The position numbers were made by a program, and so were the translations under genes. From positions 25,668,001 through 25,732,000 of the forward strand of contig NC_086374.1 of NCBI RefSeq assembly GCF_036588685.1: 64,000 nt of DNA. The letters are read 5' to 3'. Positions within the stretch are counted from its first letter, which is position 1; each line of letters starts with the position of its first letter. This document shows, in pieces, positions 1 to 31,493 of this stretch. The DNA is from Mytilus trossulus (lineage: Eukaryota). Below the pieces are notes generated by a model. That model was given only the letters and a program-made list of their open reading frames with translations. It had not been told where the DNA came from and did no database searches.

Positions 1-228
1 AAAAATATATCAGTTTTAGAGGGAATAGCAGGTGTGACTATGTACGATAAAGTTACATTAAAACATTTAGCGATACTCTCAAAATAAAAGGACAGTTTCG
101 TATTTCTGAATTTTTCTCTACTGATAAGAATGTGATTGTCTCGACAGGTGTAATTGTATCTTGAACAAGAAAGGGTTTTGGATAAACCGGTTTAAAGAAA
201 GTATAGTTTAAATGCAGACAACTTTTAC

Positions 229-3200
229 CTCTAGATTTTGAATCCATTCGATAATGAAATCCCTCATTATAATCCTGAAATTGTCTTACAAATAGTTCTA
301 TCTCCGTTCTAGAGTAGTTTCCAGTTTCCAGATTTTGTACTTTTTGAAGCAACTGTGATAAAAATTCTACCAGCGCACTGTAATTCCGATCACCTCTCAT
401 TTCCTCTATTTCGTCTAACAGGACCTGCAGTTCAGGTAGAGGTATTGTTGTTACTCCTGCAGGGTATTCAACTATCTGAGGACGTACTGGATTATTCCGT
501 CTTTCAAGTTGTTTCTTTTTCTTTTTATCCTTGTCTATAACAATCCAAGATTGAAACTAAATGTGTTAGTAAGATACGAATACCTCATCTCTACTACTCC
601 TTTTAACCTTTTTAAACCAAAAATAAAACCTTTTTTTAAAGATATACCAATAACATTCTCCACAACTAAACCAGACTTTGGTCTATAAGATATTGACATT
701 TATATTTTTATACTTTCTTACACATACATTGCTTTAAGGCTTAACAAAATAATTCAAAATCAAAAACTGTCAAGATAACCTCATTATGAGCTCTGTTCAT
801 TAATAATGATATGAACAAATACAAATATCCTAAGCAAGTTTCGTTATTTCGTTATATATTTGGTTCAGAGTATTTAATTGTGTCGTACGCATCAAAACCA
901 CATTTTTTATTTTCCAAGCTACATCATTGTCTCTTCTTCTCAGTCAATATACCATATTATCTTTATTTGATATTCATAGCAAAACAATGAATAAATAACT
1001 GACATACATTACCTCCTGGTCCTCTAACCATTTTTCCAGTATTTTGAGGTTTCCCCGTATTCCCTGCAATTTGACTGGACCTTCCTGTATTACTAGCAGT
1101 TTTGTCAGATTTCCCGGCAGGCGTTACATTTTGACTTGACTTTTTTGTATTTTGAGCAGATTTACCAGCATCAACATTAGTTTGATTACTCCTTCCGGTG
1201 TTTCCATTATTCTGAATAGATTTTCCGGTATTTGCAGGTTTTAGTGGATTCATTCCTTTCTTTAAATCATTTTGTTGTTTACCAGGTTTTTGTCCACTTT
1301 CTATGGATGTTTTCACAATATCAGCCGGGTTTCCTTTCATTTGACCATTGGGTTTATTTGGCTTATTGGCTGGTTTCGGCGTATTGGTTTGAGTTTTCTG
1401 TAAATTGTTTGCTTGATTTCCTAGTTTCTGCTGTCTGAGTTGATTTTTTTGTGAATTATTTTGCTGGTTTTCAGCATTTTGAGCTACTTTTGGGAAAGTA
1501 TTCGACTGCTTTGGTAGATTCTGCATATTTTGTTGCACTCTACTTTGTTGATTGACTGATTTCTGTGTATTTGGTTGTGATGTCATTTTATTGCTGACCA
1601 GATTTCCGGCCTTGTCTTGGTTTTGCTGACCTTTGTTTACAGTGCTTTGCTGTTTCAATGGTGGAAGACCTTTTTGGTAGGAAGTTTGAGAATTGTTTGG
1701 TCGATTTTGTTGTTGTTGTGATTTTTGCATGTTGGCAGGGAGCATACCACTTTTCTGTCTTTGTGCTGGAATCGACTCTGTTTTTGTAGTTGATTTTTGT
1801 CCTGTCTGATTTTTTGAAACTTGTCCATCCGGTTGTGGTCTATTCAATCTTTGCTGTTGAGATTTTTTGTCAAGATCCTGACGCTCTTTTAAATTATTCA
1901 ACTGTGCAGCCGGCATCGATTTTACGAGGTTATTTGTTGTTGTATCCATTTGTTTGTTCTTAGAAGAAATGATCTGAGACTTCGACAAATCAATTTTTAT
2001 TTTTGATGTCTGTCCAGGCGGAACAACATTTTGAAGTCCTTGTATACTCTTCAGCTGGCCAGTCGGCATAGATTTTGCTACATTATTAATTGCTTTGCCG
2101 TTCCTTCCGTCGGTTTTAGAAGGAATTACTTGAAACTTTGACATTGTGTTTGGCATTTTCGACATCTGTCCAATATTTTGTTTTTGTCCAGGTTTCTTTT
2201 TTTCATCACCTGTTCCATGATTGTTATTTTGCATACTTCCCAACTTCCCAAGTTTTTGAACAGATTTGGAAGGTTCATTTTTACTTATTCTTTGTTGTGA
2301 CTTCGATAACTGAGGTTCATTTTTACTTATTCTTTGTTGTGACTTCGATAACTGAGGTTCATTTTTACTTATTCTTTGTTGTGACTTCGATAACTGAGGT
2401 TCATTTTTACTTGGCGAAGGCTTTATCTAATAAATAAAAAATAATTATAAAACACACTACAAGCAACAGTGTATACGCATCTTAATATTTGTAACAAGAT
2501 TGGACTTGACACCAATAATCAGTTGAAACTAAATATTCGTGCATATTCTTTTCTTGGTTCAGTTGAACTTTAATCTTGGTTTGAAAATATATACCAATAT
2601 TGAGTCCTATTTCTGAATTTACATTTATTGTAATGACCTTAGAAATCGCAAATATTCAAAATACATTTTCTTTGTCTTGTCTTTATATGAAAAATCTAAG
2701 ACACAGTTTAGTAGATTTAAGCTGACATAAACAAAGTCTTTCGCAATTTCAAACTTTTATTTTTTATATATTTTCTTTCAAATATGGCCATTTTGTAACA
2801 TGCCAGTAATGGTGGCTTTACAAAACTTTCTGAATGCTTCTGATCTATTTTTTTTTTTTTTTTTTAATAATAGTCCTTTATTAGTTTGAATCTTTACAAA
2901 TACGGTTTTGATACAACCATCCTAACTTTTCCTATATTACACTATTGTGACGTTTAAATTATCAAGATTTGTTCTTATAAAATTGTGCTGGTCATCTAAA
3001 ACTAAGTATAATTTTTAAATATATATGTACATTCGTTGCTCTACAATCTGTCGATACCTGCATCTTGGCATTGCACAAGATCATGTTTCTCTGACTGTTC
3101 TGTTAATGACGTCTCTAAGACTAGGTGTTTTAAAATGAGATTGCAAATTATCCATGCAAAATTGACATTGTAGTTTTTTTCCACCTGTTAAGGAACTTTT

Positions 3201-6600: not shown

Positions 6601-9600
6601 TTTCTTCATTCTCTGGTTTCAATTTGATGTCTTGGCTACTAGAACGTCAATTATCTTGCCGTGATTTCTTTTGTACATTTTACATATTCACCATAGTTTC
6701 GTAACTTTTGCAACCTCCTTATGAAAACGTTGATCATTATGTATTACAATTAGATGCCCAGACTCTATGCTCTGAATTTTCCTAATGGAAGTATACTTAG
6801 AAATTATATTGGTAGAAATCGACTACTTGATTTATCGATTCAGTGCTGGTTTTTTTTCGGCGTTTTGTTTAAGATATTTCATACAAAATAAGAACGACAA
6901 AATAAATTATAAACATTGAAATGTTAAGACATTTGGCAAAATACGCGGATAGTTTGCTGTAAATGCAGGTATAATTGAGAAGGCTCATACAAACGTAGTG
7001 CAATTGTCCAGAATATGAGAAAATCATATGCTGAAAGTTAAAAAGTTCTCAGGTGACCCAATTGAGTTTATAAAGTTTGTGCGACAATTTACAGATACAT
7101 GCCACAAAGCAATTATACAGAAGACGACTTGTTGTGTTGAACTCTCTATAACAGTTTAAATATGGAGAGGCACATTAAACAGTGTCAGAGTAATGTAAAG
7201 TGAAGTCAGTTCTATAAGTGATTTAAGGGATAAATATGCTTATCGAGAGCAGCAATGGTAATAATTTGACGAAAGTTATGGCAACAGTGAAATGTCTTTA
7301 TTATGAACGTACTTTATTGGCCGATACTGAAACCAAGTGATTCAAAAAGGTTGGACATGTTTCCACTTTTCTCAATAGAGTGTGAAAATACTGCACATAA
7401 TATCGGCGTTTTGCGTACCTTCGTCTACTTGGAAAAAATAAAAAGACTCATGTGTAAAATACCGATTCATTTACATGGGAGGTTGAGAAATGTTATTCAT
7501 AGAAACAAATAAAGGCAACATTTGTATACCGCTGTTCAAAAATCATAAATCAATTGAGAGGAAACAAATCCGGGTTCCAAACTAAAGCCGAGAGAAACAC
7601 AAACAAAGAGACAGTTAAAACATTGAAATATCGTTAATTTTGCCAAAGATGATGCCAAGAAAGTAACGGACTTAATATATAGTACTTAGTAGTAGTACAT
7701 CAGTAGATACAAAATACAAAACTAAAATAAGACATTTACAATAAGTTACGGAAACGATATTGACCAACGTGTACGTAGATAATTTAAATCAGCTGTCAGA
7801 CGACAAAGTAGTATCGTTAGTAGATGGTGTTAGGTAGCTTTGCAACATATGTGGTTTAAATTTAACAAAGCACTATTTGAAATGCAGTAGAATCAATTCC
7901 AGAATATAATTCAAGTATAAATTAATTACACGTATTTTTTGTTTGTTTACTATACATGTGATAATACATGTGTGCGTGTTTAGGATAAACTATATGCTTG
8001 TTTGTCAGTTGAATGAGTTATGGCCGCAGTGCAGTATATTCATAGTTATAGAACATTGCAATGTTAATAACAGGAAATTTGAGTTCGCGCGAAAATATTT
8101 TATTGGCAAGTGTTTTTATATTTATATTTTATATTATACACTGCGGTCGTGCAGCACAATTCATTAAGAATTAATATTTTTTTAATTTGAGCTTATTATA
8201 GATGTTGAATACGACATGCTAGAGTTGTAGGATATAGAACAAGAGTGCGTATCAACGTGAAAGTGAATACTCAGAACCAATGTATTTGGCAGATGCTTTT
8301 GAAGTCTTCAAAACATATTGTGACGCTAAATTGTTCAATCTACAAGGTGATTTACAGGACAAACAATGATCTGTATCTAAGAATTTTGAGGCAGACGAAA
8401 CCATTACATTTAAAAATGAAAGTAATTGAATGCAATTCCGCTTCATTGTAGAAATCATAACTGAGACTAAGATATTTTCCTAAATCTGATCTAATTCTAC
8501 TCTGACTTCCAGTGCCGAACAATTGTACTAAATTTTAAAAGTAAAAACAAACTAATAAACGTTGCTTATAATTCTGCTCTGGGCTGGGCTACGATGAGAG
8601 AGTACGAGTTCAACGACATAGCTAACAACAAGGAGGATAAAGGGCTCTAGCTGCAATATAATATGAATATTATAACAAAAAAAAGTAGGTTGATATTTGT
8701 GTAATGTAACATGGTCCGCTTGTTGCTCTTTTCCCTCAGACTCTCAACAGACGAACTACGTCTGTGGGAGCTGATAGTGGGATCTTTACGTGTTGTGGGG
8801 GGTTCTAGCTGTGACAATGCCTAGGATGGTGCATGACATTGCTGCCGATGTAAAGGCAGGCCGGGATCGACAAACACCTAGAAAATAAAGAAACTCGCTA
8901 TTCATTTAATAAACAAAACATCAAAGTAATTACAATATAATTTCAAAGTACAATTTTAAAGTTAAAATAAATTGAAAACAATAATTAAATACTACAAACA
9001 ATTCTAATTAAATATCAAATAACCATGAACAATAATATTTACTGTTAAATTTGTTAAATTTAACCTTTGAATTAAAATATTAGTTTATTATAACCTTTAT
9101 CAATTTTTTTCCAAAATAAAATTAAAAGAAAATAATTTTAAATCTAAATCATTTTTAAAACCAAGAGACTCACCTAAAATATCAAGAAACTCGCTATTAA
9201 TTTAATTGCGGCTTGGTCAGTTTATATACTAATTTCTAACGTTCTGATAACCCTTAAGTATCTGCAGCAAACAGGATTACAGAAAATAAACAGGATAGAA
9301 AAAAAAACGAAAACAGGACAATGAAAGGATTTATAAGTTATTAACAAAAAATAGAATGCATAAATATAGTTATGGTCAATATGATTCAGAACTTTCGATA
9401 ACAAAATACTCAAAGGAACTGATCAGGCAAATAAAAAGATGATACAGTAAACATAAGAAAGTTCATATACACGTTACTTCACCTGTACATATTCAGGATG
9501 TCACTATCCTGTCACGATATAAGAGAAAACTTGATGACCTAGAAAAAAATAACAGCGTGTACGTACATTGCCAAAGGAGTATGTCCGGTTTATGATTTAG

Positions 9601-9737
9601 CCCATGAACGATTTCTTTTTAGATTTGTCACTGGTATAGAAAGATAATTAATCTCTGCGCGACTGATTTTTCCACTTCACATGATTTTTGTAATATGTTT
9701 TAAACTATGATTAAGCCACCTTATTATATCAGTCATT

Positions 9738-9754
9738 CATTCATTTTACTACAG
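9738..9754 (+). promoter_or_regulatory. Putative spliceosomal 3' acceptor in the 5' UTR of hldE
   Basis: Pyrimidine-rich cattcattttactacag ends at 9754, 60 nt upstream of the ATG. The ATG context aatATGG is Kozak-like and has no Shine-Dalgarno. The matching donor was not identified. Confidence 0.4.
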
Positions 9755-9814
9755 ATTTGAAAATTCAATGCAACGTACTATACACTTTTGTGAAATATTG
9801 ACAACACATTAAAT

Positions 9815-11230
9815 ATGGATATTCTACAATTATTAGATTGTTCTAAACGTGTTTTAGTCGTTGGAGACGTGATATTGGATAGATATATCTACGGGAAATG
9901 CGATCGTGTAGCTCCTGATATCGCTGTCCCAGTTTTAACTGCATTATCCAAAGACTTCGCACTTGGTGGAGCTGGTAATGCCGTTTGTAATTTAATAGAG
10001 ATGTGTTTGATTGTTGATTTTGTCACAATTATTGGTGAGAAAGATAAAGTCATAATCAATTTACTAAAGGATAAGGGCATAAGTGAAGATGGTATTTTAA
10101 GATGTCCTAATTACCGTGTTAAAGTGGTCTCAAGATACATTGCCAATCGTCATCAGTTTATTCGAGTGGACAAACATGTTGATAGTCAAGTAAAAGACGA
10201 AACTGAAAACAGACTTCGAGACATCATAAAGAACAAGATGGCTGCCATAAAGTACGATGCTATTGTTTTGTCTGACTATAGAAAGGGAGTTTTGTCTGAA
10301 GAGACAGCAAAAGGGATAATTTCTGAAGCCAACGTTCTACGAATTCCAACCATTGTTGATCCAAAAAAAGGAAACTATCAACGATTTCAAGGGGCAACGT
10401 ATATAAAACCAAACAAAGAAGATGTAAGCTACTTAATGGACATTAATGTTGTTACAAAGAGTAACATACCCATGATCTGCAAACAATTTTGTGAACGTTT
10501 CAATATAGAATATTGTATTTTAACACTAGCCGATGATGGAATAGCCTTCTACAAGAAAGATGAGAGCGATGGACTTCTCTTTGGGGTCATTCCAACACAT
10601 AACAATGTAGATGTAGTCGATGTATGCGGTGCTGGAGATACATGTGTAGCTGCTATTGTATTTGGAGTATGTCATCAATGGCCTCTAGACAAGACATGTA
10701 ACTTTGCAAACATGTGTGCAGCTAACGTTATAGACAAATGTGGAACAATACCTGTTAGAATGCTAGATATAATTCATAAAGTAGTGTACAGCCAAAAGGA
10801 ACTTGTAAACATAAGGCGTCTTATTCCAAAAAAATCCACTATTGTCTTAACTACAGGATGTTTTGATTTATTACATGATGGTCATATAAAATCTCTTCGT
10901 GAAGCAAAAGATCTCGGTGGTCTTTTATTTGTGGCCTTGAATTCCGATATATCCGTGAAGAAGAACAAAGGAGATAAAAGACCAATCATACCTCAAACAG
11001 ATCGCTTAACTATGCTTATGGCTACAAAGTATGTAGATTTTGTCATCATGTTTGATGAAGAAGTTCCGTATTGGATTATAGAAACTCTAGACCCAGATAT
11101 TTTTGTAAAGGGTCCTGATCGTACAGAGGCAGATCTACGAAAGCGTTTTCCAGGCATTAAAAAAATACACATTACAGACAGTAAAGGTATATCAACTTCC
11201 GGTATTATAGAGAAAATAAGAAAATTATGA
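9815..11230 (+). CDS. hldE: Bifunctional HldE (RfaE/GmhC): D-glycero-beta-D-manno-heptose-7-phosphate kinase / heptose-1-phosphate nucleotidyltransferase, single coding exon
   Basis: 471-aa intact ORF. N-terminal PfkB-type kinase motifs: VLVVGDVILDRY, GGAGN, LSDYRKG, IVDPK, KPN, VDVCGAGDT, AN..A..V..K.GT. C-terminal cytidylyltransferase-family motifs: TGCFDLLHDGH (HxGH), LNSD.SV...KG..RP, VDFV..FDE, PDIFVKG.D, GISTS.II.KI. Domain order and length match bacterial HldE. Confidence 0.95.
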   Translation: MDILQLLDCSKRVLVVGDVILDRYIYGKCDRVAPDIAVPVLTALSKDFALGGAGNAVCNLIEMCLIVDFVTIIGEKDKVIINLLKDKGISEDGILRCPNYRVKVVSRYIANRHQFIRVDKHVDSQVKDETENRLRDIIKNKMAAIKYDAIVLSDYRKGVLSEETAKGIISEANVLRIPTIVDPKKGNYQRFQGATYIKPNKEDVSYLMDINVVTKSNIPMICKQFCERFNIEYCILTLADDGIAFYKKDESDGLLFGVIPTHNNVDVVDVCGAGDTCVAAIVFGVCHQWPLDKTCNFANMCAANVIDKCGTIPVRMLDIIHKVVYSQKELVNIRRLIPKKSTIVLTTGCFDLLHDGHIKSLREAKDLGGLLFVALNSDISVKKNKGDKRPIIPQTDRLTMLMATKYVDFVIMFDEEVPYWIIETLDPDIFVKGPDRTEADLRKRFPGIKKIHITDSKGISTSGIIEKIRKL

Positions 11231-12137
11231 GCATTTGGTAACCACTTTCTGCAAAGATGTCATGCAAAGGTTTATGTAGGTAACTGTCAAAGTTCTTTTT
11301 GTCACGAAACCACATATACAGAAGTCTTGCTTGTGTTGACATTGGACTTTAACAAAACAAATACTAGTAAGCTTTATTGGTATGTTATAATGCAATATGT
11401 TATTAATTTGTATGAGAAATTAAAACAACATTTTATAAAAGTTTGAACTGTTTTTAGGAGTGATTTACTCTCACCAAGAACGTTAAATGCTGAATATTTA
11501 AAAGCCAATAATGTATAAGTACCGAAACAGATGAAAATCTGTATGAACAGAAAGCACATACAAATTATAACCAAATTAATATAAGGTCAACTTTGCCTGA
11601 GGGCATTGATCCTTCTTTTCATAATAATTCAAAGTTTATGAACGGACAATTTTAGAAAGGTTTTTTATAAGTCATGACAGTATATTATAAATCATGTTCG
11701 TAACGAAGTACAGTTGAACATGTGATCTCTATATGTCAAGATACTGGTGATAATAATCTTTGCGACTTATTGACCCAGTGTAATTTGTTCAGGGATAGTT
11801 AAATGTTCAATTGTATTTAAGAAAGGTAGAACGAAAACGGCAGATAGAAAAGTGGTACAACATTCGTCATTTTTAAATAATTAAGAATAAAAAACTTTTT
11901 TTGTGTGATGCAATCGTTGTCATATTTCCAGCATATCGGTATATAATGTAACAATTGCAGTCTTTGTATGAGTTCAATACAAATACTTTATTCTCAGTCT
12001 AAATACTTATTACAAGTCGATTAATGCTCGCATCAAAAGCCATAATTATAATATATATCTTGTTTGTTCGGGGGTTGATGAATTTGATTTTTGTTAGCTT
12101 GTTACTCGGGATTTTCTACATTTTCTTGAGATAATTA

Positions 12138-12275: not shown

Positions 12276-13293
12276 ATTATGAATAAGGGAGATAACTCCA
12301 ATTGATGTAATAAAAATTGTTCTGAAATTTATTAGGACAATATCAGCCAATCAAATTGCGATAAATAAATGTAAATCGCTTATCATTCTCTGTTATCACC
12401 AGTGTTTTCAGATATCATGCGCTTCAAAGATTTATAAATATCGGTATCATTAGCTAGTCAATTTTTATCAAAAAATTTGTCTTAAAATCGTAAAAATACT
12501 ATTTTATATTCTTTTAATTTTAAATCTCATCACCTGACTTGATTATTTGGGTCTTAAAAATGTAATAAAACAGCTCTACACTTGAAGAACTACATAGAAC
12601 GTAAAACCTCATACAATTAAGATTTGAATTTAATTGAATTTAATAGAACTTGTTAGACGCCTTTATTCCAGACGACGTACTTTGTCTTAAACATATATAG
12701 TTATTAAAGGTACCAGGATTTTAGTTTAATACGCCTGACGCGCGTTTCGTCTACATAAGACTCATCAGTGACGCTAATATCAACAAATTTATAAAGCCAA
12801 GCAAGAAAAAATTTGCAGAGAATTGAGGATAATATATTTGTTCAAATTTTAACTTCCGCGGAGTTCAGTATTTTTGTTATTTAACTTTATACTAAATTGC
12901 TTCATTTTGTGATATCATGTACCATGTGTGTGATTAGTAGTTTCAATAATGTTAACATGTTCGATGATCATCGCCACCAAAAAGTCAATATTTTAAAAAA
13001 GCTACATTATTTCATGTACCTTTTATATGTTAACATTATTTTGTAATTCTATCAAGAATGTTGCAACCGTCTAAATGAATGACGGCTATTAATGTTTTAT
13101 ACCTTATTTTGATAAGTTGATCATTATGTATCCCAATCAGCTGTCCTGACATTATGCTCTGATTTTTTTTCTGATGAAAGTAAAAAAAGAAACTATATTT
13201 GCAGATACTAAATACAAGATTAATGAATTCAGTGCTGTTGCGGCGTATATTTAAAAATGGTTCAAGCAAAATTAGGACTACAAAATTAACACT

Positions 13294-15254: not shown

Positions 15255-18200
15255 TCATTGAAAGAATAAATGACCTCTGAGACAGTCAACAAACATTGTA
15301 ACGGATCCTAAATCACCAGGTCTAAGTTCTGACTTCTTTTCTGCCAATTCTCTATTCATGTCTTCAAGAATTGCAACCAAATCGCACCTAAAATATAATA
15401 TAATTCATCAACAAGGATATAAATATAACAAGTAAAGTTTACCCAACATTTGCTTTTTTTACACACACACCTCTTATTTTTTATTTTCTTATGTATTACA
15501 TAACGTGCAAAGACTGTACAGAATATTGCAGTTATTGTCAAAACGTATTTTATTTTAACGCCTTAAAATGAGTGCTTGTATACAATAACTAACCATGTGA
15601 TTATGGATTTCCGAATTGATTTTCCTCTAAGTTCAGTATTTTTGTGATTTTACTTTTTTCTGTATCTAGATGTACATGTACACATAACAAAGGCAATTGC
15701 ACGAGTACTTGTGTATATTATGGTAACAGTAGTTTGCCGATGCAAAAATCTAACACCACAAAGGACGAGAACAGGTGCTTTGTTCTGAAAAGCCATGCAA
15801 ATATACTTCCAGTCAAAATTTCGCACTCGGGGAAACGGCACAATCGGTCAAATTACAGATAAGACGAATATTCTTATAAACATTGTCCAAGCTTGAATAC
15901 TATTTATTGCACTAGTAGGAGAGTGCAATTAATAGTCTACTACAAGATATTAATGTAGAGATTTTCAGAAAGGTTTATGGTAAATGAAAGGTTAGATTGC
16001 TACATCTGTTTCATAATTAAGAATATGCCAAACCGTTTTCGTCAAAAATATATGAATTAAATTCAATAAAAATCAAACAAACAATCAAACAAACAAACAA
16101 ACAAACAAACAAACAAACCACACGCACACACACATCGCAAAATAACACATTTCTTATTGAGGTCAATAAAAAAAAACACCCCAAAACACACGCTTAAATA
16201 TTTGAAAATAAAAAATTCAAAAATGATAATTAAAAACTGGTTTCACACTGAGAATTTAAAATCGCACACATAAAACCATGGGAAATAAATCTGTCAACGA
16301 GGTCATATTTGTAGATCTTTGTACCTTTGTCCATAGGTACTCAATCATACCACACTTGATATATCGTTTGGTTTGAAAAGGTATAACTTTTGTTTTGCTT
16401 TAGTATTTTATAATAGATTAACATTGATATGTCGACATAAAAGGCTAAACCATAAAATGTTGACGTTTTTGTATTTTATGAAATCGTGTCACCTCACGAT
16501 AGACAACATTTCACTACGAAATACTATCTTTGACAATATTTCACTTTGAAATACTGTAAATGACAATATTTAACAGTGAAATTCTCTTCATTCCAATATT
16601 TATAAGCTCTTATAAACTTCGTACTTTATTTTGCCTTTTTAACATTTTGGATTCGAGCGTCCTTGATGGGTCTTTTGTAGACGAAACGCGCATCTGGCGT
16701 ACATACAAAGTTTAATCCTGGTATTTTTAATGTTTTTTAATGTGAAATACTGTCCAAGAAAATATTTCTCAATCTAATTATATCTTCCTGAGAAATCATC
16801 TGCCATAAAAATTGTGAGCGTGTCTGGATCAAATTCTTTTTTTGATGAAAGAACCAATAAGAATTTCTGCATATATTCATTACATATGAGAGAAAGGGAG
16901 GGGACTGGATCGTTATTCTTGGTATCAAAGATGTTCACTGCTATACCAACTCAGAATATCTTATAAACGTTCCAATTCCTTTATTTTACAAAGCATTACG
17001 AGTTATTAATCATAATTATCTTTTACTTATTCGTGTCACAGACCATAGCATTGAATGTTAGTAACCATTAACTTACGCTTTGTATTTGTCACTGAGATGT
17101 TTATACAGTGAGTAGAGATAATATGATCCAGTCTTTTCTCCGTCTTTAGGGTTGTATGCTAGATTTCCCGGCAGTGTCGAAAAACCATAAAGAAAGTCTG
17201 TATCATTTATAAGGGGCTGCAATGTTTTTTGCATCTTATCTGAAATATAAACAGGCTAGTCGTTGTGCATTGCAAGCAAGGGTGTCGTCATATTCTTAGA
17301 AATGTGGTAAACAAATATGCAAAGACTGGATGTCAAGTTCTGTGTTACAAGGGATTTCAAAATATTGAAGGAAACCGTAAAAGACAAAAGCTAGCACACA
17401 ATTAACCATAAACATTTTCATATAAAAAACAAGAGTTAGTTCATTGAGGGCTGTCATAATCAGGTATGTCATCAACGGTATGTACATCTTATTTGGTATA
17501 AGACACTGATCGTATGTATTGTCCAGTAATCAAAGCCAGCAACGGGCCTTATTCCAGACGAGGAAATAAGGTAAATATGTGGAGGACTCTTACCACGTAA
17601 TGATATAATCAGCTTGTGATGGTGACTATAAAACTAAAATTTAAATCCTGTCAAGTAGTTCTGCCAAGAAAACAATCGCTCTTGATACAAGCTTTCATTC
17701 TATTGCACAACAAAAGGAAAGTCCCTGTTTGGAAACTGAATTCCTGTATGTAATACGTTTTCATTTTCTTTCTTACTTCTTTATGATCAATTAATGATAC
17801 CCAAATACGAGCATTTGAATTAGTGTCGCGCCATTTGGAATATATTGAGGAAAACTGTGATCATTTTTAGCAGAATTGATCAGAATTCCATTACTAGAGA
17901 CTTATGTTATTATGTTTTTAAGAGACGGGTTATCATTTTCATAGAAAAAGCAATGCACAATAAGTAAACATTTGTTGAAAGACTCATACTGAATTATCAA
18001 TTTATTAGTACAACATATTCAAAAAGCTTTACTGTACATGATATTTATATGCTTCACAAAGTACAGAATAGATATCTCTCAAAAATTAGCATGTGTAGTG
18101 TGAAGTACCTTCAGTTTCTATGTTGCATGCTTGAAACAAAAATATCTTCGGTTTTCCATCTAGATCTGGACATGCATCCACAGTGAATCTTTTTAACTGG

Positions 18201-21200
18201 GGACCTAACATGAGATCATACCCATCACTGCCGTAAACTTTATTGGCTGTCCCGTGACTGGAAATAATACAAACAAAACAGTCGAATTTCTTGTGATCAG
18301 CTTCTGCCATAGCTTTCATTTCACGCTCTATCTCCCATTTCTTCAAATTATCCTTCCTAAGTACTTTATAACCAATCGTTGACATAAGCCCCTCTAGTCG
18401 TTCTGAAACACAAATACTATTTTGTATGATGCATATCAACAAAACGTGTTGGCAAACAAACCGAACATTTAAGAGAGCTTTCTGTCAAATGACCTTCACA
18501 AAGTGTGGACTGGTATTGTGGTATAAAATATATGAAAATCAAAACCCATAACTCGAAAGCAAATTAAAATCAAAATGACGGCATAATATAGTCAACTATA
18601 CATAATGGCATATGACCCTGCCAAGAATAAATCCTTCTGTTTATAGAGGACTGCTGATTTAAATTGCAAAGATAGTGGTGTATCTGAAATTATAAAACGT
18701 AATTCTACTTCTACTAAAAATAACCCACACCTATACTATCCAAACATTTACATGCAAAGTTAAATAATGATCTAATGAAATTACAGTACACCTTTTCTAT
18801 AAGTTATGTCTATTCAATGTGTACTTTAATTTTCTTAGCACATTCAATGTTTCTACATGTTTGTGATATCTTGGACATTAATATACTCGTTGGCTTGAGC
18901 AAAAGATCTTAAAATAAATATGTTAGATAGAGATCAACAGTAGATTTTCAATGTATGCAAAAGTGTATATTTGTTTAATTGTACTCCACGACAAGCGTAA
19001 ATACTTACTTGCATCACCTTCCACACCTGGTCTGTTGGGCAACTTTTTACTGATTGGACATCCCGGTACTTGATAAAATTCACTGTTGGTTATCAATAAG
19101 CAGTAACCTAAAATTTTCAAATTGATAATACTTATTTTTCCATTGGAATCTTCGTAATTTGACACCCTTTCTTACAAATATTATTGAAACCATCATTTTC
19201 AGACACTTTTTTTTTTAACTAAAACTATTGAAATCGTTAACATTAGTTAGTGTTTTGAATATTACCTTAGAACACATCATTATCGGACAGTTTTAAGGCA
19301 AATACCATTGGAACAATCATTAAAAGGCATAGTTTTCACAAATTCATTTGAAACCGTTATTATCAGACAGTTGTTTTACAAAAATATTTGTCACCATCAT
19401 TATCCGGCAATGTTGTGACAAATGCAATAGGAACCAACATTATCACACTGCTTTGGTAAACACCATAGTGAACTTCATAATCAGGCAGTATTTTGACACG
19501 TATTATTGGAATCATAAAAACAAGGCAGTGTTGTGACGTATACCATTACGATTATTATTTTTAGACAGGGGGTTGACATATTCATATCAACATCGTAGAA
19601 TCTATTCTCAAATCCTCTAGTATAAATACTGACTTACCAACAGGTTTAACAGTCAGCCTGTACTGAAATCCATCGGTATAGTCTTGGTATTGTCTAACAG
19701 TCATGTCAATCTCTATTCTTGAGAATTGCCCATCTTCCAACGTATTCAACTTCCTGAACAAATCTGACAAAAAACCAAGTGTGGCGGAATATTTCTGGTC
19801 TGTTTTCAGCTGTTCTATCAGAGTTAACACACCACGAGCATCTTTTAAAGGCAGCACTGTTGTTCCCAGATGGAGCTCTACGACTTGTGCAGTTTTTGTT
19901 TCCTTTTTCTTGTTTTTACCTTAATATATGAGTTATTTGATTTGACAAAGGTATTATATAACTTTTTTCAACTATTAGAAGAAAGTGAAAAATTTACACA
20001 TGTAATGACGAACTACAATTGGGCACGATAAATGTGTTTTAATCGTAATTTCAGATGTTCTGTCATCCTTTTAAAAAATTGGGAAATCTCATAAAAATCA
20101 CAAATTTGAAATTTGAAAAAAACGCATGAATATATAAATTATTCCATATCACATTTCAAAACTAGTTTAAAACTGACTTGAAAGTTTAAAAAAACGTTCA
20201 TTTATAAATAGAATTAGACATACACTTTAAGTACTTGGATTGCGGTTTGAAGGATAATTTAAAGAAATGGGAGATAGAGCGTGATGGAGAAATGTCTTAT
20301 TTGCATTCCTGCAAGCCACATCTTTTTATATCTATTATATCATAACTACATCTCAGTTTTAAGTCTTCTCTAAACATTCAATGTTATCTGAGAGGTATCA
20401 GGCACATAAAGACGCAAAACAGAAATCCGGTCAAATATCCTTGCATCTCTGCATCTTGAAAGTATTTTATAACTGATCGCATAGTTGTCCTTTTTCTGCA
20501 AAATTTTTATGATGTGTTTGTCTTATTAAATAGTCGACTGACTATACTCTTTAAAAAGAACTCTTTTATTGTTATTTAAGCGTATCAAAGTTATCAAATT
20601 AATGTTTTGGGGTGAAAAAAAAAATCTTTAGGTGTAATAGTTTAAGAACGTGCTTTAATGATCCGTTTTTGGTTGCCAGTTTTATCTTTTTTGATTATCA
20701 ACACTACATTTCTACACAATTCTGTCAACTAGAACATGTTAAATTAACCTTATTATTGCAACTATTATTTGCTTCAACTCACATTCATTCAGCTTTTCAT
20801 TATGAAATTAAAAATATAGCTTTGCTATATATAGTAACTGTGATAAAACTATAAGAACTGTTAGTATTCTCCTTGACAATATCAGTGTACGTTTCGGCAA
20901 TTTACTTTATTAATAGGTTGTAGGTATTCCTATGAGAAGTATTTTTGCTCCTTCGATAGCAGATTTTTACCTACCTGTCTTGTCATTGATCATAGTGTAT
21001 TTATCTTGCTCATAAAAAATCTAACATGAGCAGTAATGATGATCCATGATTATACGTTTCTACGATTTGAATATTTCATTTCCCATGTTGTAATCCATGA
21101 AACTTACTAAACTGTGTTCGTTTTGACTTATTGTTGAACATGTTGAATGACACATGGCAACCTGTATATGTTCACATCATTATCCATTGATATTTTGCGG

Positions 21201-24200
21201 AGATTTGTATCTATGTTAATCATACAGCATCTTATTTTCATAATTTACTTTCAGCTTTCAATAAAATATCTTAGGTATATTTTCAATATTTGATAGTGCT
21301 TTTTTATTTAAAAAATATGCAAAAGAAAGATCGCACTCCAAACATGCATGTGGACAACACACATTCAAATAAAAGATGAGAAATAAAAATGATCAGACAT
21401 TTTTCACTAATGTCTAATTATACATATAAACATAATGGAAGCTGTTTTATACGACAAACATTTTCAGATTTGAGATTTACAAAATCAGCAGACAATGTTT
21501 TGTATACAATAAACACACGATGCACCAATATGCAACATTACATGTGATACACAAATATTTAACAATACTTGCATAAAACGTACGAACATTCCACAAGAAC
21601 AAGTATAGCATCAAGTTACAAACATAAAAATATTAAAAAATAACTTGTTTTGTTGTTGATGTACAGATATATCTCAATTTACTTAGAATTACTTGTCATT
21701 TCCAAATCATCTAAATAATAAAAAAATTCTTCACATCAAATTGTAGTACAGACACATAAACATGGCTACCCGAGGTCGTTGAATTTTTATTTTTTAATTT
21801 TTTTTCCCTATGCAGTCATACCTTTTCCAAAAAAAAAATATATTTTCAATCGCCATAGTAATGATGATTTGAAAACGTTATACAACTCATTTCGAACTTT
21901 TTCTCTTACGTACATGACGAAAACTAGTTGTCTAAAACTACATATGTTGTCTGGAATAGATAATTTTTCTATTCGACCAAATTGGAAAAAAACATGACAT
22001 GCAATTATGTATTCTCAAAAAATATTTACATCTTTCCAAATTAAACATAAATGATAAATGGGAGACTCTCTTCAAAGAACGAATTTTTAATAGATAAGAA
22101 GCAAATAATATTTGGAGTGAACGTCAATCAAACAGAACATGAACGACACAAAACACATTCCAAATCACAAGGAACCTAGTAGAAATGTGGGTATCATAAA
22201 GAAGAAGTGTGGAATACAAAATAAGTTTACATTAAGATTTATTGGAAATCCAACAAACTTATTCCTGTAAGTGGTAAATGGACTAACTAATGTATCGTAT
22301 TGAGTAGAATTAAGAATGGAAATGGGGAACGTGTCAAAGAGACAACAACTCGACCACAGAAAAAAAAGATAGGTTTTGTTCACGCATCGTTGTCTACATA
22401 ATAGAATTAGATGCGACTTTCATATAAGTGAGAGAGCTTCATCTAGCTATACAACCAGTCTCAATCCGCTATTTTCTACATAAGAAATGCCTGTACCAAG
22501 TCAGGAATATGACAGTTGTTCTCCATTCGTTTGATGTACTGAAGCTTTTAATTTTGCCATTTAAATGGGGACTTTCCGTTTTGAATTTTCATCGGAGCTC
22601 AGTATTTTTGTGATTATAATTTTTATAAAAATGCCTGTCATTCAAATAGTCTGAACACAGAGCGACTTAACCTTGTAAGAAATTGTTAGTTCTAACCGAT
22701 TTTAACGGTTCAACCCTCAATTTTTCTTATAATGTCTTGTCCAAGTCAGGAATATGGCAGTTGTTATCCAACAGTGTATGTTGCATTGCCGTTTATTTTG
22801 TTGCACTTCAGTGTTCTGTTGTTTCGTTTTTTCCTCTTATAGTTGATGTGTTTCCCTCGGTTTTAGTATGAAACCTGGATTTGTTTTCTCTACTTCGATT
22901 TAAGACGTTTGAACAGCGGTATATACAAGTCTACTGTTTCCTCGATTTAAAATGGGTGTAAATATATCTCCTGCATAAAACCGGGTTCATAATTACCAAT
23001 GTAAAGGTTTTAATATGGTTACAGAGTGACACTTAGTATAGTTAGGCACATATCAAAGTATATGGTATAGGGGTTTATAATTTTCTTGTTAAATAATGTG
23101 GTATGTTATAAAATATTGGTAATACTATCGACAGTCGGAACCTTTAGTTAAAGAAGAAGAGCGTGTATTCTCGGTGCAACCAACTGCTAAGATTATTGTA
23201 TCGTCCTAATTATCACTTATTCAGTATTTAATTGTATAAACTCTGTGTGCGACTCTTTATTAATAAAATTCACGGTACCAATTTTCTTGCACCAGATGCG
23301 CATTTCGACAATACATGTCTCTTCAGTGATGCTCGTGGCCAAAATATTTGAAATCCAAAGATTATATAAAAGATGAAGAGTTTATTAAGGTATACCATCA
23401 ACAACAAACAAGTTTCTTGCCATTAACCATACCGAATAGAACGGAATCATATACTTCCATGAGAAATTCTGATGGAAAGAAAGCACAAAAGATACTGAGA
23501 TGTTATAATATTCATTTATCATTTCATTCAATAATTTATAGTGGTGTACTCTTTGGTCGAGCGAAAAGCTTTTTTGCAAATGACAAAAACACATCAATCT
23601 TTAAACAAAGGAAAATGGTTCATGCATTTTTATCTTAAGTGCTATGCAATTAAAAAAACAATGTTCTGAAATCAAGGGGATTATTTCACCACCTAGTAAA
23701 AATAAGTGGAATATACTATGAACTCTTGTTCTTTAAAATTTTGAAAAAATACGGATGGAAAAATTTCTATCTGGCATATGACAAAAAGAATTTACAAAAT
23801 ACAATACGTACCTAATTGGTTGGCAGATGGGTTGGCCAGTTTCTTCCGTCTCTGGTCCGTCTTTACATTTGTATCCTATATATGTTAGTATTGAATTATA
23901 ATTTTTCATTTGTAATAAATTAAAGCATCCGATCAAGTATATGTACATTATGCTTTGTTGTGATTAATTTTGCCATCCCCAATAATACACTTGCATTGTC
24001 TTGATATAGCGGTACTCTATAAGGTAATTTATGCTGGTCTTTGTTGTTTTTTTAAAGTCTAATATGGAGGTTTGGTATATTTTATAGCTAGTAACCTCTG
24101 GGTTCGTGGTTTCTATTTAGCGAACCAACTATTATCCATTGTATCCATATGAAATGACTGTAAGAAGGCAAATTTTTTTAGTCATTCACAAATTGTTTTG

Positions 24201-28925: not shown

Positions 28926-31493
28926 CATCTTCTTCGCCAACTGGACAGGCCTGGAAGAAACACAGTTTTGGTTTGCCTTTCAGATCTTTGCACGCTTCCT
29001 GTTTGAACAACTTTAATTGTTGACTTATCAAAACGTGTTGCCCGTCACTGCCGTATAGTTTCCCTATATTTCCATGGCTGGACAAAATAAGTAGAAAACA
29101 GTCAAAGGCTTTATGGTCAGTACGTGCTATGGTCTTTATTTCATGTTCCATTTCCCATTTTTTCAGGTTATCTTTCCTAACTACACGGAATCCTAGTCCC
29201 GTTAAAACTGTTTCCAGGTTTTCTGAGAAGATTTTTTATGAATAATAATTAAAAACTTTAGTTTGCTAGAAATCAAATTAAAAATGATTATGTATCAAAT
29301 ATTAAAAAAAAAATATACTAATCGAGAAATGTTATATACCGAAAAATGTCAACTTGGTTCTGAGAAATGTCGAGTAACTTATAATAAATTTTCTGTTTCT
29401 CATGTTTACTGAGAAATGTGACCTTAGAACTGAGAATTGCAACTTTCAACTATGTTTAAATGTTTAGAACTGAGAAACGTCAACTACTAATAGAAATGGC
29501 ATGTACTGAAAACATGTCAAACTTGGAACTGATAGAAGTCCCGGGAAATTGCAACTTGAAGATGATATTCAAACTTGGAACTGCAAAATATTTTCCCAAC
29601 AAAATGTCACTGCTGGTTGTTTCGTAATTGATAAAAATACAAATGTGTATTATCATTATATTTTCCCTCCCTTTAGCAGCAAAATACAAGCCTCGCCCGC
29701 GCATAGAGCATACATGTCTCAACTCGATATTAAAGAGCTTACAGAGACTCTACAGATACTATTCATCCTTGGAAAACGTCATCGGTGTCGGTGTCTCTAT
29801 ACAAGTTCATCAAAGAGTATCTTTTTGAATTGTTTATTTTTTAGTTTGTGAGTTATTCGACAAAAATTACATATTTATAACCTCTAGAAAAATATGTTTA
29901 ATCCTATAATGTTTTTAATGTTAGTACCAATTAAAACAATATCTAATTTTTTACTGCTGTGCTATATTGGTAACATTACTAATAGGTTTTCAAAGAATAA
30001 ATTAGTTAACATTGAGCTGTTTAACTAAATATCAAACTTTACCTGCATCAGTGTCTGCTCCAGGTCTTTTTGGTAATTCTCTACTTAAAGGGTCTCCAGG
30101 AATCTGGTAAAATGTTCCATTACTAATGATTAGTGCATAACCTGTTCAAAATAGGTAGACATATACTTACATATAAAATTTCGGTATATGCGATTGTTGG
30201 TTATTTACTTTACATTTTTGTTTATCTTTTTATAATTATTTTTGCATATTGCCACAAAGGCAAAAGTCTATCCATTTTTTTTGCAAAAAATACCACTCAA
30301 GCCTTAGCTACGACCGTTTTAAACTTGCGGTGAGGTGAAAGTGATTAAGCTCCATGTTGAAGGCCTCACTGTGATTCGATATAAAGAACAGCTATAAAAG
30401 CGCTGTTCATTTGGTTTTTGTTTGTTTTTGTTGTTGTGGTTTTGGTTGTGCATGTATTGGTTTTGTGTCATTTTGTATTTAATAAAGAAAAATAAACACC
30501 TCTTGGTTTAGCATCCATTTTGTATTTAAATCCTTCACTATAATCCTGGAACTGCCTTACTGTCATGTCCACTTCTAATCTAGTGGAATGGCCCTTCTCT
30601 AATGGCTGCAACTTCCGGAAAAGCTCTGTTAGAAAACCTGATGTGTTTACGAACCTATCGTCTGTTTTTAACTTTTTGTACTGATCCAAAACCAGTTGAG
30701 CGTCTTCCAGAGGCAATTCGGTAGTTCCTAACTTGAGTTCAATACTTTCCGTTTTCCCCGATTTACCTTTGGTTATCTTCTGTGGTGTCTCATCTGCAAT
30801 GTTCATTTTAAAAAATCATACCTGACTAACACCTAGAAAAAGTTTACAATAAGGATCAATTGAGAACAAAATGCGATTAAAGAGTTGATTTCAGCTTACT
30901 AATTGTGAACTTTCCATTTATACGAAGCCATATTCCTATAACGCCTACATATAAGTTAAATATTTCTCAGTTTATACAACATTCAAGAGCCAACGTTTCC
31001 TGTAATTATTTCCCTAATAGATAATTGCTGCATACAAGGAAGCCATTGATCCATTGGTTCCAAGAGATCAGGTTAAAGTAATCCCTTCGATAATTTTACG
31101 GACGCCATTACGAGTTGGATAACTGTTACTGAATATCTGTTTCACAGATGACAATGTATTTATATGTCCCAAATACCGTTAACACAGTCCAATCATATTT
31201 CCCTCAAATGTGAACGAGAATTATGGCCAATTTGTACTGGCATGAGTAACATGAAGTGTAAAAATTTGTACAGGTACAACATCAGCATAATACATTTGTA
31301 TTTTCCTATCTGAAAAGTTGGAACCTATTCTGTTGTCCTCAAGCAAAATCATTGTTTTCCTGCCATGCCAAAAATTACAATAATTACCTTCCTGAGGACC
31401 ACCATTTAAACCTTGAACAATATATTTCTTGTCTTTTTTAAGCTTTTCGTCCTCTTTTACCTGACCTTTAGTTGTCTTGTTTAAAGCGGCCAT
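28926..31493 (-). CDS. Caspase-like gene C: prodomain + p20 (SHG / QACPV); own p10 exons not found
   Basis: Exons (minus): 31502-31388 (ATG at 31493), 30793-30500 (..VRQFQDYSEGFKYKMDAKPRG), 30141-30043 (GYALIISNGTF..LPKRPGADTDA) and 29222-28926 (FDCFLLILSSHG..YGSDG..LKGKPKLCFFQACPV). Exon sizes and phases mirror gene B. There is a probable 5'-UTR exon ending at 32015 (gtaag donor). Confidence 0.8.
29320..29590. repeat. Degenerate ~20-bp tandem repeats in a gene C intron
   Basis: Repeated aactgagaaatgtcaacttgg-like units. Confidence 0.55.

What the first reader, a model, noticed from the sequence alone, without database searches (positions are those of the whole stretch)
9815..11230. Intact bacterial-type ADP-heptose synthase (HldE) inside an animal caspase gene cluster
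Seen: a full-length, uninterrupted, single-exon HldE with the kinase (GAGD) and nucleotidyltransferase (HxGH) motifs intact. It is flanked on both sides by host repeats and spliced caspase genes. It has no operon neighbours and no Shine-Dalgarno, shows AT-rich codon usage, has a candidate 5'-UTR splice acceptor (9754), and has ATTAAA/AATAAA downstream (~11419, ~11886). Known: HldE makes heptose-1,7-bisphosphate and ADP-heptose, the LPS-core precursors that mammalian ALPK1-TIFA senses as a PAMP; heptose enzymes are not standard animal genes, although homologs outside bacteria have been reported. Inference: a domesticated horizontal acquisition (bacterial or large-virus origin). It could let an invertebrate make its own NDP-heptose as an immune signal, a heptosylation donor, or a means of modifying microbial heptose phosphates. 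Its position among immune-type caspases may be functional or incidental.
Basis: partly seen in the sequence, partly recalled or inferred. Interest (0 to 1): 0.92.

Follow-up and report, generated by a model that had tools for sequence, protein, structure and literature searches.

The report
Mussel HldE-like heptose nucleotide-sugar gene
The mussel (Mytilus) genome carries an intact, transcribed, intron-less gene for a bacterial-type ADP-heptose synthase (HldE) among caspase genes; it is real and host-owned, but it is already annotated and this kind of gene has been published for molluscs, so the only new points are that its usual pathway partners are missing and that its closest non-animal relatives look viral.

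Summary
Window 9815-11230 (+) is one uninterrupted 471-aa ORF with a PfkB kinase domain and a cytidylyltransferase-like domain. HldE is by far its best family, though below NCBI's equivalog cut-off.

It is a host gene, not contamination:
- It lies on a 103.7-Mb chromosome scaffold, in single copy.
- Its read depth in an independent DNA run equals that of the flanks.
- Its GC3 matches host exons.
- Caspase p20-type exons lie on both sides.
- Orthologues are annotated in M. edulis and M. galloprovincialis, and HldE-like genes in the clam Mya arenaria.

RNA-type contigs cover only about 9732-11393 and run colinear across the proposed acceptor at 9754. The mRNA is therefore unspliced, about 1.7 kb long, and the acceptor is not supported. 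Sampled variants are mostly synonymous (13:8).

In a maximum-likelihood tree the bivalve sequences form a 100/99-supported clade. Its sister is a virus-like environmental group. The clade lies outside the sampled bacteria and outside giant-virus MAG (GVMAG) sequences.

The genome shows no GmhA and no GT9 heptosyltransferase, and the one alpha-kinase I examined is not built like ALPK1. The enzyme is therefore an orphan step.

Tang et al. 2024 already reported NDP-heptose enzymes in Mollusca. The finding is real and only modestly novel. The scan had noted this same stretch once before, and nothing similar on other DNA.

The parts
9731..9814 (+). Inferred unspliced 5' UTR; the likely transcription start is at an initiator-like TCAGTC (9729-9734) just downstream of a TATA-like TTATTATAT (9721-9729)
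   Evidence: RNA-type contig X9 record 28 ends exactly at 9732 and is colinear to 9888. X6 depth in bin 9652-9848 is about 60% of the next bin. Depth is zero over 9258-9651. Sequence. The start site is an inference.
9815..11230 (+). Complete single-exon CDS of 471 aa plus stop: HldE-like bifunctional enzyme
   Evidence: Identical to the annotated protein P0122 of the same 103.7-Mb contig.
9848..10750 (+). PfkB-family sugar-phosphate kinase domain (residues 12-312), with the GGAGN motif at 51-55 and GAGD at 272-275 (nt 10628-10639)
   Evidence: Pfam PF00294. TIGR02198 rfaE_dom_I scores 233.6 bits against 50.6 bits for the next kinase family. Sequence match to HldA 4E84, E 2e-28. The AlphaFold model's best structural matches are the HldA entries (4e8y_B E 9.1e-26; 4e84 TM 0.86-0.87), against 1e-17 for ribokinases.
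10829..11224 (+). Cytidylyltransferase-like nucleotidyltransferase domain (residues 339-470), with HDGH at 354-357 (nt 10874-10885), NSD at 376-378, KG at 385-386 and C-terminal G-I-S-T-S
   Evidence: PF01467. TIGR02199 rfaE_dom_II scores 130 bits. Match to HldC 5X9Q, E 1.1e-23. Motif list from PMC7993394. Alignments.
11231..11445 (+). 3' UTR up to the proximal poly(A) signal ATTAAA (11419-11424); the end point is approximate
   Evidence: RNA-type contigs end at 11358-11393 (X15, X9, X6). Transcript-sized public contigs of 1.56-1.67 kb carry the orthologues.
11886..11891 (+). Distal AATAAA, a possible alternative poly(A) signal
   Evidence: Sequence. One low-depth X6 contig covers 11812-11995. 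Orthologue contigs of 1.9-2.26 kb exist. The evidence is weak.
18089..18442 (-). Context only: nearest downstream caspase p20-type exon
   Evidence: Pfam Peptidase_C14, E 2.5e-20. Paralogous exons found. The upstream counterpart is at L173:8179-8508.

Best explanation
This is a resident, single-copy, intron-less nuclear gene of Mytilus. It encodes a cytosolic two-domain enzyme of the HldE family, also called NDP-heptose biosynthetic enzymes (HBE). [quoted passage not shown] After removal of the 7-phosphate by some phosphatase, the C-terminal HxGH nucleotidyltransferase domain joins heptose 1-phosphate to AMP from ATP, giving ADP-heptose. The gene is transcribed as an unspliced mRNA of about 1.7 kb from its own promoter and is kept under purifying selection. 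It belongs to an old bivalve lineage of HldE-like genes whose nearest non-animal relatives are virus-like environmental sequences, so it was acquired long ago and not from a present-day bacterium. The genome lacks a detectable sedoheptulose-7-P isomerase (GmhA) and any GT9 heptosyltransferase. The enzyme therefore probably works on heptose phosphates that the mussel does not make by the canonical route, for example from ingested or infecting Gram-negative bacteria, or on substrates from an unknown isomerase. Shown here: gene structure, host integration, family and fold, clade placement, and absence of partners in six-frame searches. Inferred: the catalytic activities, ATP preference, source of substrate, and biological role.
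For: - Intact ORF and two-domain architecture.
- Catalytic motifs are conserved in alignments with bacterial HldE, HldA and HldC.
- The AlphaFold model has pLDDT 86.7, and its best structural matches are HldA entries (4e84 TM 0.86-0.87).
- The gene is single copy on a 103.7-Mb contig.
- An independent DNA run (X2) has a 2154-nt contig over 9448-11602 at depth 9.25, against 8-9.8 in the unique flanks.
- Three RNA-type runs cover only about 9732-11393.
- Variants inside the ORF are 13 synonymous to 8 non-synonymous, pN/pS about 0.17, binomial p 8e-5.
- GC3 is 0.27, like host exons.
- Orthologues: XP_071153715.1 (M. edulis) and VDI52348.1 (UniRef A0A8B6FMC8), both 92-93% identical. Mya arenaria has HldE-like proteins at 40% identity.
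- Careful ML tree: the animal-type clade has 100/99 support and its sister, the virus-like group, 98/94. Brachyspira-type and other bacteria and the GVMAG sequences lie outside.
- Published enzymology: the HBEs tested from several kingdoms, at least one per kingdom including eukaryotes, made ADP-heptose, and HBEs occur in Mollusca (PMC11461863; PMC11573728).
- Pathway partners are absent, with a positive SIS control.
Against: - The protein scores well below NCBI's HldE equivalog cut-offs: 271 against 521 bits overall, and both domain models are also below cut-off.
- Several predicted heptose-1-P and nucleotide contact motifs of HldC differ throughout this clade: TNG becomes TTG, ExTP becomes EEVP, STT becomes STS, and the aromatic first residue of the FxxxRSTT motif has no clear counterpart. 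Substrate or nucleotide specificity may therefore have shifted.
- No GmhA, HldD or heptosyltransferase is detectable, so neither a source nor a consumer of ADP-heptose is known in this animal.
- The RNA runs are only guessed to be RNA, and they are contigs, so transcript ends are approximate.
- The variant sample is the tool's best-supported subset, not a full dN/dS analysis.
- An intron-split GmhA could escape a six-frame search.
Confidence: 0.7

Rival explanations
1. Neofunctionalised enzyme. The HldE fold is retained, but in bivalves the kinase and nucleotidyltransferase act on another sugar phosphate and/or nucleotide, so the product is not ADP-heptose.
For: The protein is below all HldE equivalog cut-offs. 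Sugar-contact motifs of the transferase are changed throughout the clade (TNG to TTG, ExTP to EEVP; the NxxE-type motif of the kinase reads NKED). No GmhA or heptosyltransferase is found in the genome. The stem branch of the clade is long.
Against: Both halves score far higher with the heptose-specific models than with any other kinase or transferase family: 233 against 51 bits and 130 against 51 bits. The best structural matches are HldA, E about 1e-25, against 1e-17 for ribokinases. The eukaryotic HBEs tested by Tang et al. made ADP-heptose. In the sister group, contig L086 keeps the gene beside a small sugar phosphatase and an SDR (short-chain dehydrogenase/reductase) epimerase/dehydratase, as in heptose modules.
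Confidence: 0.2
2. Bacterial or viral contaminant, or an assembly chimera placed among host genes.
For: The family is of bacterial type and the gene has no introns. Short-read contigs break at the flanking repeats, so no single short-read contig bridges to the caspase exons.
Against: Depth equals that of the unique flanks in an independent study. There are no N runs in the window. Composition and GC3 match the host. Proteins 92-93% identical sit on the 108-Mb M. edulis chromosome and on a 250,917-nt contig holding VDI52348.1. The nearest prokaryote is only about 35% identical. RNA-type coverage is mRNA-shaped.
Confidence: 0.02
3. A decaying relic: integrated long ago, still open by chance, and no longer functional.
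For: Pathway partners are missing. Protein divergence within the genus is fairly fast (87-93% identity). The P0002 cluster carries G310R at a nearly invariant glycine.
Against: A 471-codon open frame persists in 32% GC DNA in several species. Synonymous variants are in excess, p 8e-5. Catalytic motifs are untouched by the 33-62 substitutions between Mytilus forms. The gene is transcribed.
Confidence: 0.05
4. A recent, Mytilus-specific transfer from a bacterium, for example a symbiont or food bacterium.
For: The gene has a single exon and lies between repeats.
Against: No sampled prokaryote or cultured phage is closer than about 35%. Mya arenaria and other transcript-like sequences share the clade at 100/99 support. 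Codon composition is fully host-like.
Confidence: 0.03

Closest known systems
Eukaryotic NDP-heptose biosynthetic enzymes (didomain kinase/nucleotidyltransferase 'HENases') of Tang et al., Science 2024 (doi 10.1126/science.adk7314; read here only through PMC11461863 and PMC11573728)
   Same: The didomain architecture is the same, and the taxon is covered: the authors state that HBEs occur in Mollusca and Arthropoda. The physiological role in the producer is unknown there too.
   Different: The primary paper could not be read, so I could not check whether this Mytilus protein was among those listed or assayed. The commentary on that work describes eukaryotes as having the isomerase, whereas no GmhA is detectable in this genome. 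The STTR5 arginine is absent here (G-I-S-T-S), which by their rule argues against CTP/UTP promiscuity.
Escherichia coli-type HldE (RfaE), NCBIfam NF008454
   Same: The alignment is colinear over the full length (profile positions 11-473 of 475). The PfkB and HxGH motifs are present, and the protein is of similar length to the 475-position model.
   Different: The score is 271 bits against the 521-bit cut-off, and identity to sampled bacterial HldE proteins is about 30-36%. There is no operon and no GmhA, GmhB, HldD or WaaC partners. The gene has a eukaryotic promoter and poly(A) context.
Burkholderia HldA (PDB 4E84) and HldC (PDB 5X9Q), the split versions of the two activities
   Same: These are the closest solved structures for each half, by sequence (E 2e-28 and 1.1e-23) and, for the kinase half, by fold (TM 0.86-0.87).
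   Different: Here the two are fused in one chain. Several HldC sugar and nucleotide contact motifs are altered: TNG to TTG, ExTP to EEVP, FEHDRSTT to ..DSKGISTS.
HldE-like proteins of Mya arenaria (XP_052788354.1 and others) and of M. edulis (XP_071153715.1) and VDI52348.1 (UniRef A0A8B6FMC8)
   Same: They fall in the same clade and have the same architecture. The two Mytilus-type proteins are 92-93% identical orthologues.
   Different: The Mya proteins are only 40% identical, and several accessions and isoforms (492, 478 and 550 aa) sit on one 56-Mb contig.
HldE-type genes of cyanophages and giant-virus MAGs
   Same: They are two-activity heptose genes carried outside cellular bacteria.
   Different: They are only about 29-34% identical. 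The GVMAG sequences form their own clade away from the bivalve lineage. The actual sister group (P0008-P0010, P0164, L086) is uncultured.

Membership tests
HldE / didomain NDP-heptose biosynthetic enzyme | PfkB kinase domain fused N-terminally to a cytidylyltransferase-like nucleotidyltransferase domain in one chain of about 470-480 aa | tested here: met
   PF00294 at 12-312 and PF01467 at 345-439. NF008454 is aligned over positions 11-473 of 475.
HldE / didomain NDP-heptose biosynthetic enzyme | Score above the curated equivalog cut-offs (NF008454 521 bits; TIGR02198 345; TIGR02199 181.5) | tested here: not met
   Scores are 271.2, 233.6 and 130.3 bits. These are still the best families by a wide margin; the next kinase family scores 50.6 and the next transferase 51. 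The protein is a divergent relative, not an E. coli-type equivalog.
HldE / didomain NDP-heptose biosynthetic enzyme | Kinase catalytic motifs of the PfkB family (GG-x-G-N near the N-terminus; the DxxGAGD motif, whose Asp is by general PfkB knowledge the catalytic base) | tested here: met
   L50, G52, N55, N59, G272, G274 and D275 are invariant in alignments A1 and A2. They align to the corresponding HldA residues.
HldE / didomain NDP-heptose biosynthetic enzyme | Transferase motifs: HxGH, and TNG, NSD, KG, ExTP, KGG and (F/L)xxGxSTT as listed for HldC in PMC7993394 | tested here: inconclusive
   HDGH, NSD, KG and K-G (432-433) are present. TNG reads TTG, ExTP reads EEVP, STT reads STS, and the aromatic first position is not evident. 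The changes are shared by the whole bivalve and virus-like clade.
HldE / didomain NDP-heptose biosynthetic enzyme | Fold closest to heptose 7-P kinase rather than to other PfkB kinases | tested here: met
   The model has pLDDT 86.7. Foldseek: the HldA entries are best (4e8y_B E 9.1e-26; 4E84 E 1.5e-25, TM 0.86-0.87), ribokinases reach 1e-17.
HldE / didomain NDP-heptose biosynthetic enzyme | Catalyses heptose 7-P 1-phosphorylation and heptose 1-P adenylylation | not testable with these tools
   This needs an enzyme assay or complementation. It is supported only indirectly, by published assays on other eukaryotic HBEs.
Complete ADP-heptose pathway (GmhA-HldE-GmhB, then HldD and GT9 transferases) | Presence of sedoheptulose-7-P isomerase GmhA in the same genome | tested here: not met
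   TIGR00441, PF13580 and NF001628 give no match in the 1.3-Gb genome, even at E up to 1. The SIS control PF01380 finds exons at E 1.6e-11. Caveat: a gene split into short exons could be missed.
Complete ADP-heptose pathway (GmhA-HldE-GmhB, then HldD and GT9 transferases) | Presence of an ADP-heptose 6-epimerase (HldD) and a GT9 heptosyltransferase | tested here: not met
   PF01075 gives no match. The TIGR02197 hits are generic SDR epimerases that score equally with GalE and TviC models and are below cut-off.
STTR5-type promiscuous heptose nucleotidyltransferases (Tang et al.) | Arginine at position 5 of (F/L)xxGRSTT | tested here: not met
   The C-terminus reads ..S-K-G-I-S-T-S, with isoleucine at that position. 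The motif definition is from PMC11573728.
ALPK1-TIFA type sensing of ADP-heptose in the same organism | A protein with an ALPK1-like N-terminal ligand-binding domain followed by a C-terminal alpha-kinase domain | tested here: inconclusive
   There are seven alpha-kinase domain matches in the genome. The one long ORF examined (981 aa) has the kinase domain at residues 38-209 and no sequence match to any solved structure, ALPK1 included. The others were not examined. The literature states that ALPK1 and TIFA are vertebrate-only.

The most novel reading that the evidence does not exclude
The mussel cannot make heptose 7-phosphate itself. In this reading it uses its HldE-like enzyme to convert heptose phosphates released by Gram-negative bacteria into ADP-heptose inside its own cells. 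That would be a host-side amplifier feeding an as yet unknown invertebrate receptor, possibly coupled to the surrounding caspase genes. It would be an ALPK1-independent heptose-sensing pathway in protostomes.
Probability: 0.08. Interest if true: 0.85.

Novelty: already known. Interest (0 to 1): 0.38.

Why it matters
ADP-heptose is a textbook bacterial signature that vertebrates detect through ALPK1. Animals that encode the synthase themselves blur that self/non-self logic, and nobody knows what they use the sugar for. This locus does not reveal a new kind of gene: it is annotated, and the class is published for molluscs. It does give a clean, single-exon, expressed and easily cloned example in a tractable aquaculture species. 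It also adds three testable points. The canonical first enzyme and all known consumers of the product are missing. The bivalve genes form one old clade next to virus-like sequences. The gene sits head-to-head and tail-to-tail with caspase genes.

Tried and rejected
The genomic context of the closest non-Mytilus relatives (P0003-P0010) could therefore not be read, and their organisms remain unknown except for Mya arenaria.
L085, which looked like a split match, is a GC-rich bacterial contig.
- Single-protein scans for P0004 in viral and prokaryote collections found nothing.
- P0010 has no close viral hit. Its best prokaryote matches are spirochaete MAGs at 39% identity, which fall with the bacteria in the tree.
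- The cultured phage collection holds nothing closer than about 33%.
- The ESM Atlas only confirmed the family.
- The mimivirus early-promoter octamer is not enriched in L086. I therefore call the sister group 'virus-like', on the basis of tail-fibre-like and MutS_V+HNH genes, not giant virus.
- The TIGR02197 hits looked at first like HldD companions but are generic membrane-anchored SDR epimerases.
- A strict QAC[RQGK]G search found no caspase. The local caspases read QACN and QACP.
- No retroposition hallmark (poly(A) remnant or clear target-site duplication) flanks the gene. The only flanking similarity is a 196-nt stretch at 71% identity, 6713-6906 against 13101-13289.
- The Science paper itself is not held.
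- The open literature has no paper on a bivalve HldE.
Full report
**1. The observation**

- Window 9815-11230 (+) is one open frame of 471 codons with an ATG start. It is much the longest ATG ORF in 64 kb of 32% GC DNA.
- An in-frame TGA at 9791 closes the frame upstream. The start context has A at -3 and G at +4, and there is no Shine-Dalgarno sequence.
- Pfam finds a PfkB kinase domain (12-312) and a cytidylyltransferase-like domain (345-439).
- NCBIfam aligns the bifunctional HldE model end to end, at 271 bits and E 1.4e-80. The two heptose-specific half-models score 234 and 130 bits, while every other kinase or transferase model scores about 50 bits or less. All three HldE models are below their curated cut-offs.

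**2. Host gene or contaminant**

- The window is C2:25,668,001-25,732,000 of a 1.3-Gb, 541-contig assembly. The contig is 103.7 Mb long, and the gene occurs once.
- The window has no N runs.
- In an independent DNA study (run X2), a 2154-nt contig covers 9448-11602 at depth 9.25. Unique flanks are at 8-9.8. Contigs break only at high-copy repeats at 7485-7681, 8667-9257 and beyond 11425.
- The GC3 of the ORF (0.27) equals that of neighbouring caspase exons (0.27-0.38).
- The identical protein is already on record for this same contig (P0122).
- Proteins 92-93% identical are XP_071153715.1, 'bifunctional protein HldE-like [Mytilus edulis]', on a 108-Mb contig, and VDI52348.1 (UniRef A0A8B6FMC8), named as heptose 7-phosphate kinase / 1-phosphate adenosyltransferase, on a 250,917-nt contig. 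From my own knowledge, not from a tool, VDI52348.1 belongs to M. galloprovincialis.
- Contamination or chimerism is therefore very unlikely.

**3. Neighbourhood**

- A Peptidase_C14 exon lies at 18089-18442 (-).
- Paralogous p20-type exons lie at 28930-29226 (-), 37757-38002 (+) and 52120-52434 (-).
- I fetched 40 kb upstream of the window and found another at L173:8179-8508 (-), about 11.3 kb before the HldE start.
- The gene thus sits inside a caspase array, on the opposite strand to its two nearest caspase neighbours.
- Whether that placement is functional was not testable here.

**4. Transcript**

- Three runs classed by the tool as probable RNA cover the stretch from about 9732 to about 11393. 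They show zero depth in the unique intergenic DNA at 7682-8666 and 9258-9651.
- One contig ends exactly at 9732 and is colinear to 9888.
- That end coincides with an initiator-like TCAGTC preceded by a TATA-like string.
- Contigs end at 11358-11393, shortly before the ATTAAA at 11419-11424.
- Public contigs carrying the orthologous proteins are 1.56-1.67 kb and 1.9-2.26 kb long. These sizes fit use of the proximal and distal poly(A) signals.
- I conclude that the mRNA is unspliced and about 1.7 kb long. The spliced 5' UTR is not supported.
- Caveat: these are assembled contigs and the RNA label is a guess, so the ends are approximate.

**5. Constraint**

- Of the 21 well-supported variants that the read tool listed inside the ORF, 13 are synonymous and 8 are not.
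- The ORF has 306 synonymous and 1107 non-synonymous sites, which gives pN/pS of about 0.17 and a binomial p of 8e-5.
- The 33-62 amino-acid differences between Mytilus forms avoid the catalytic motifs. The exception is G310R in the 87% cluster.
- This is a biased sample and not a full dN/dS analysis.

**6. Relatives and origin**

- Two large protein searches give the same picture. After the Mytilus forms, a few sequences are 38-46% identical, and bacteria follow at 36% or less.
- One of the near group is Mya arenaria 'HldE-like', with several accessions and isoforms on a 56-Mb contig.
- A careful maximum-likelihood tree was built (59 rows, LG+C20). It puts Mytilus, Mya and seven unlabelled, mostly transcript-sized sequences in one clade with 100/99 support.
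- That clade is sister (joint clade 100/99) to a group of uncultured sequences (98/94 support): P0008-P0010, P0164 and L086.
- Sampled bacteria, including the Brachyspira-type sequences that are the best prokaryote matches of that sister group, lie outside. So does a separate giant-virus MAG clade.
- L086 is the only sister-group contig I could read. It is compact and 34% GC.
- L086 carries a tail-fibre-like glycine-rich protein, dCMP deaminase, an FkbM methyltransferase, the HldE homologue, an SDR epimerase/dehydratase, a small HAD-type (haloacid dehalogenase family) sugar phosphatase and a MutS_V+HNH protein. It is virus-like, but I cannot say whether it is phage or giant virus.
- The gene therefore belongs to an old bivalve lineage of non-animal ancestry, or perhaps a wider protostome lineage. 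A recent bacterial capture is excluded.
- The direction and date of the transfer are not resolved.

**7. Function**

- The AlphaFold model is confident (pLDDT 86.7, pTM 0.86).
- Its best structural matches are the Burkholderia HldA entries, well ahead of ribokinases.
- By sequence the two halves match HldA (4E84) and HldC (5X9Q).
- The kinase motifs are intact.
- In the transferase, HxGH, NSD and KG are intact. Three motifs that PMC7993394 lists as heptose-1-P or ATP contacts differ across the whole clade.
- The arginine of the STTR5 motif, which Tang and colleagues link to CTP/UTP use, is an isoleucine here.
- The likeliest chemistry is heptose 7-P to heptose 1,7-bisphosphate, and heptose 1-P plus ATP to ADP-heptose. 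A shifted specificity keeps about one chance in five.

**8. Pathway context**

- Three independent GmhA models find nothing in the genome, while the related SIS model detects host exons.
- No GT9 heptosyltransferase is found.
- The hits to the HldD model are generic intron-less SDR epimerases with an N-terminal hydrophobic stretch.
- Alpha-kinase domains exist, but the one long ORF I examined is not built like ALPK1.
- The mussel enzyme is therefore an orphan step. The canonical source of its substrate and all known users of its product are missing.
- This differs from the published summary, which describes eukaryotes as having the isomerase. It is the main new observation, subject to the caveat that short exons can escape six-frame searches.

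**9. What is known**

- The commentary by the authors of Tang et al. 2024 states that HBEs occur in bacteria, archaea, viruses, dinophytes and protostome animals 'Arthropoda, Mollusca, etc.'. It also states that the enzymes tested from each kingdom made ADP-heptose, that ALPK1 and TIFA are confined to vertebrates, and that the role of heptose in animals is unknown.
- The primary paper is not held, so I could not check whether Mytilus itself was listed or assayed.
- No open paper deals with a bivalve HldE.
- With the RefSeq and UniProt annotations, the gene and its kind count as already known.

**10. Verdict**

- The finding is real but of modest novelty (interest 0.38).
- The most novel reading still open is a host-side converter of bacterial heptose phosphates feeding an unknown invertebrate sensor. 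I give it about 8%.

**11. Tool notes**

- No spliced model had to be joined.

Noticed in passing
L167 (G000:C8:34082894-34083808), L168 (C1:89162255-89163166), L169 (C8:34067577-34068368, one TAA), L170 (C6:1157413-1158126): Intron-less SDR nucleotide-sugar epimerase/dehydratase-like ORFs of 343-373 aa. Two have a hydrophobic N-terminal stretch, and two lie 15 kb apart with one interrupted by a stop codon. They score equally with GalE, TviC and HldD models, so they are not specific HldD genes. They are possible further single-exon sugar-nucleotide genes of non-animal type.
   Followed up: partly
L208:1328-4273 (-) = G000:C15, about 7.99 Mb: A 981-aa single-exon ORF with a divergent alpha-kinase domain at its N-terminus (residues 38-209) and about 770 residues with no Pfam or PDB sequence match. 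Three further alpha-kinase matches on C6 lie within stop-free open frames of about 300 aa.
   Followed up: partly
window 9964-11362, as seen in run X6: The same run holds two contig versions of the gene that differ by about 6-7% at the nucleotide level (for example 1 against 16 differences in 261 nt). A protein cluster at 87% identity (P0002) exists, although the assembly has one copy. This points to very divergent alleles, pooled individuals or species admixture. P0002 carries G310R at a nearly invariant glycine.
   Followed up: partly
window 18089-18442 and 28930-29226 (-): The caspase p20-type exons read QACN and QACP where canonical caspases have QACRG, so at least some members of this array have a non-canonical active-site pentapeptide.
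   Followed up: no
window 963-2243 (-) and 53-400 (-): A 426-aa Q/N/K-rich low-complexity open frame and a 115-aa ORF lie upstream on the minus strand, in line with the caspase exon at L173:8179-8508. They may be the 5' exons (prodomain) of that caspase, which would make it divergently oriented to the HldE gene.
   Followed up: no
window 7485-7681: An extremely high-copy short repeat: summed contig depth is about 100,000 in a DNA run where unique DNA is about 9. It is also present in the RNA-type runs. Copies occur at 22847-22923, 45295-45390, 52457-52548 and 62867-62930.
   Followed up: partly
L086 (metagenome contig Ga0209086_10004949, 9.8 kb): A compact AT-rich, virus-like contig. The HldE homologue sits with a small HAD-type phosphatase (PHROG label 'phosphoheptose isomerase'), an SDR dehydratase/epimerase, an FkbM methyltransferase, dCMP deaminase, a TnpB-type fragment and a MutS_V+HNH protein. 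It is the only readable context for the sister group of the bivalve genes.
   Followed up: partly
window 6713-6906 and 13101-13289: A 196-nt direct similarity (71% identity, with a 52-nt core at 83%) brackets the HldE gene at a spacing of 6.4 kb. It is too short and too diverged to call a duplication boundary or a mobile-element end.
   Followed up: partly
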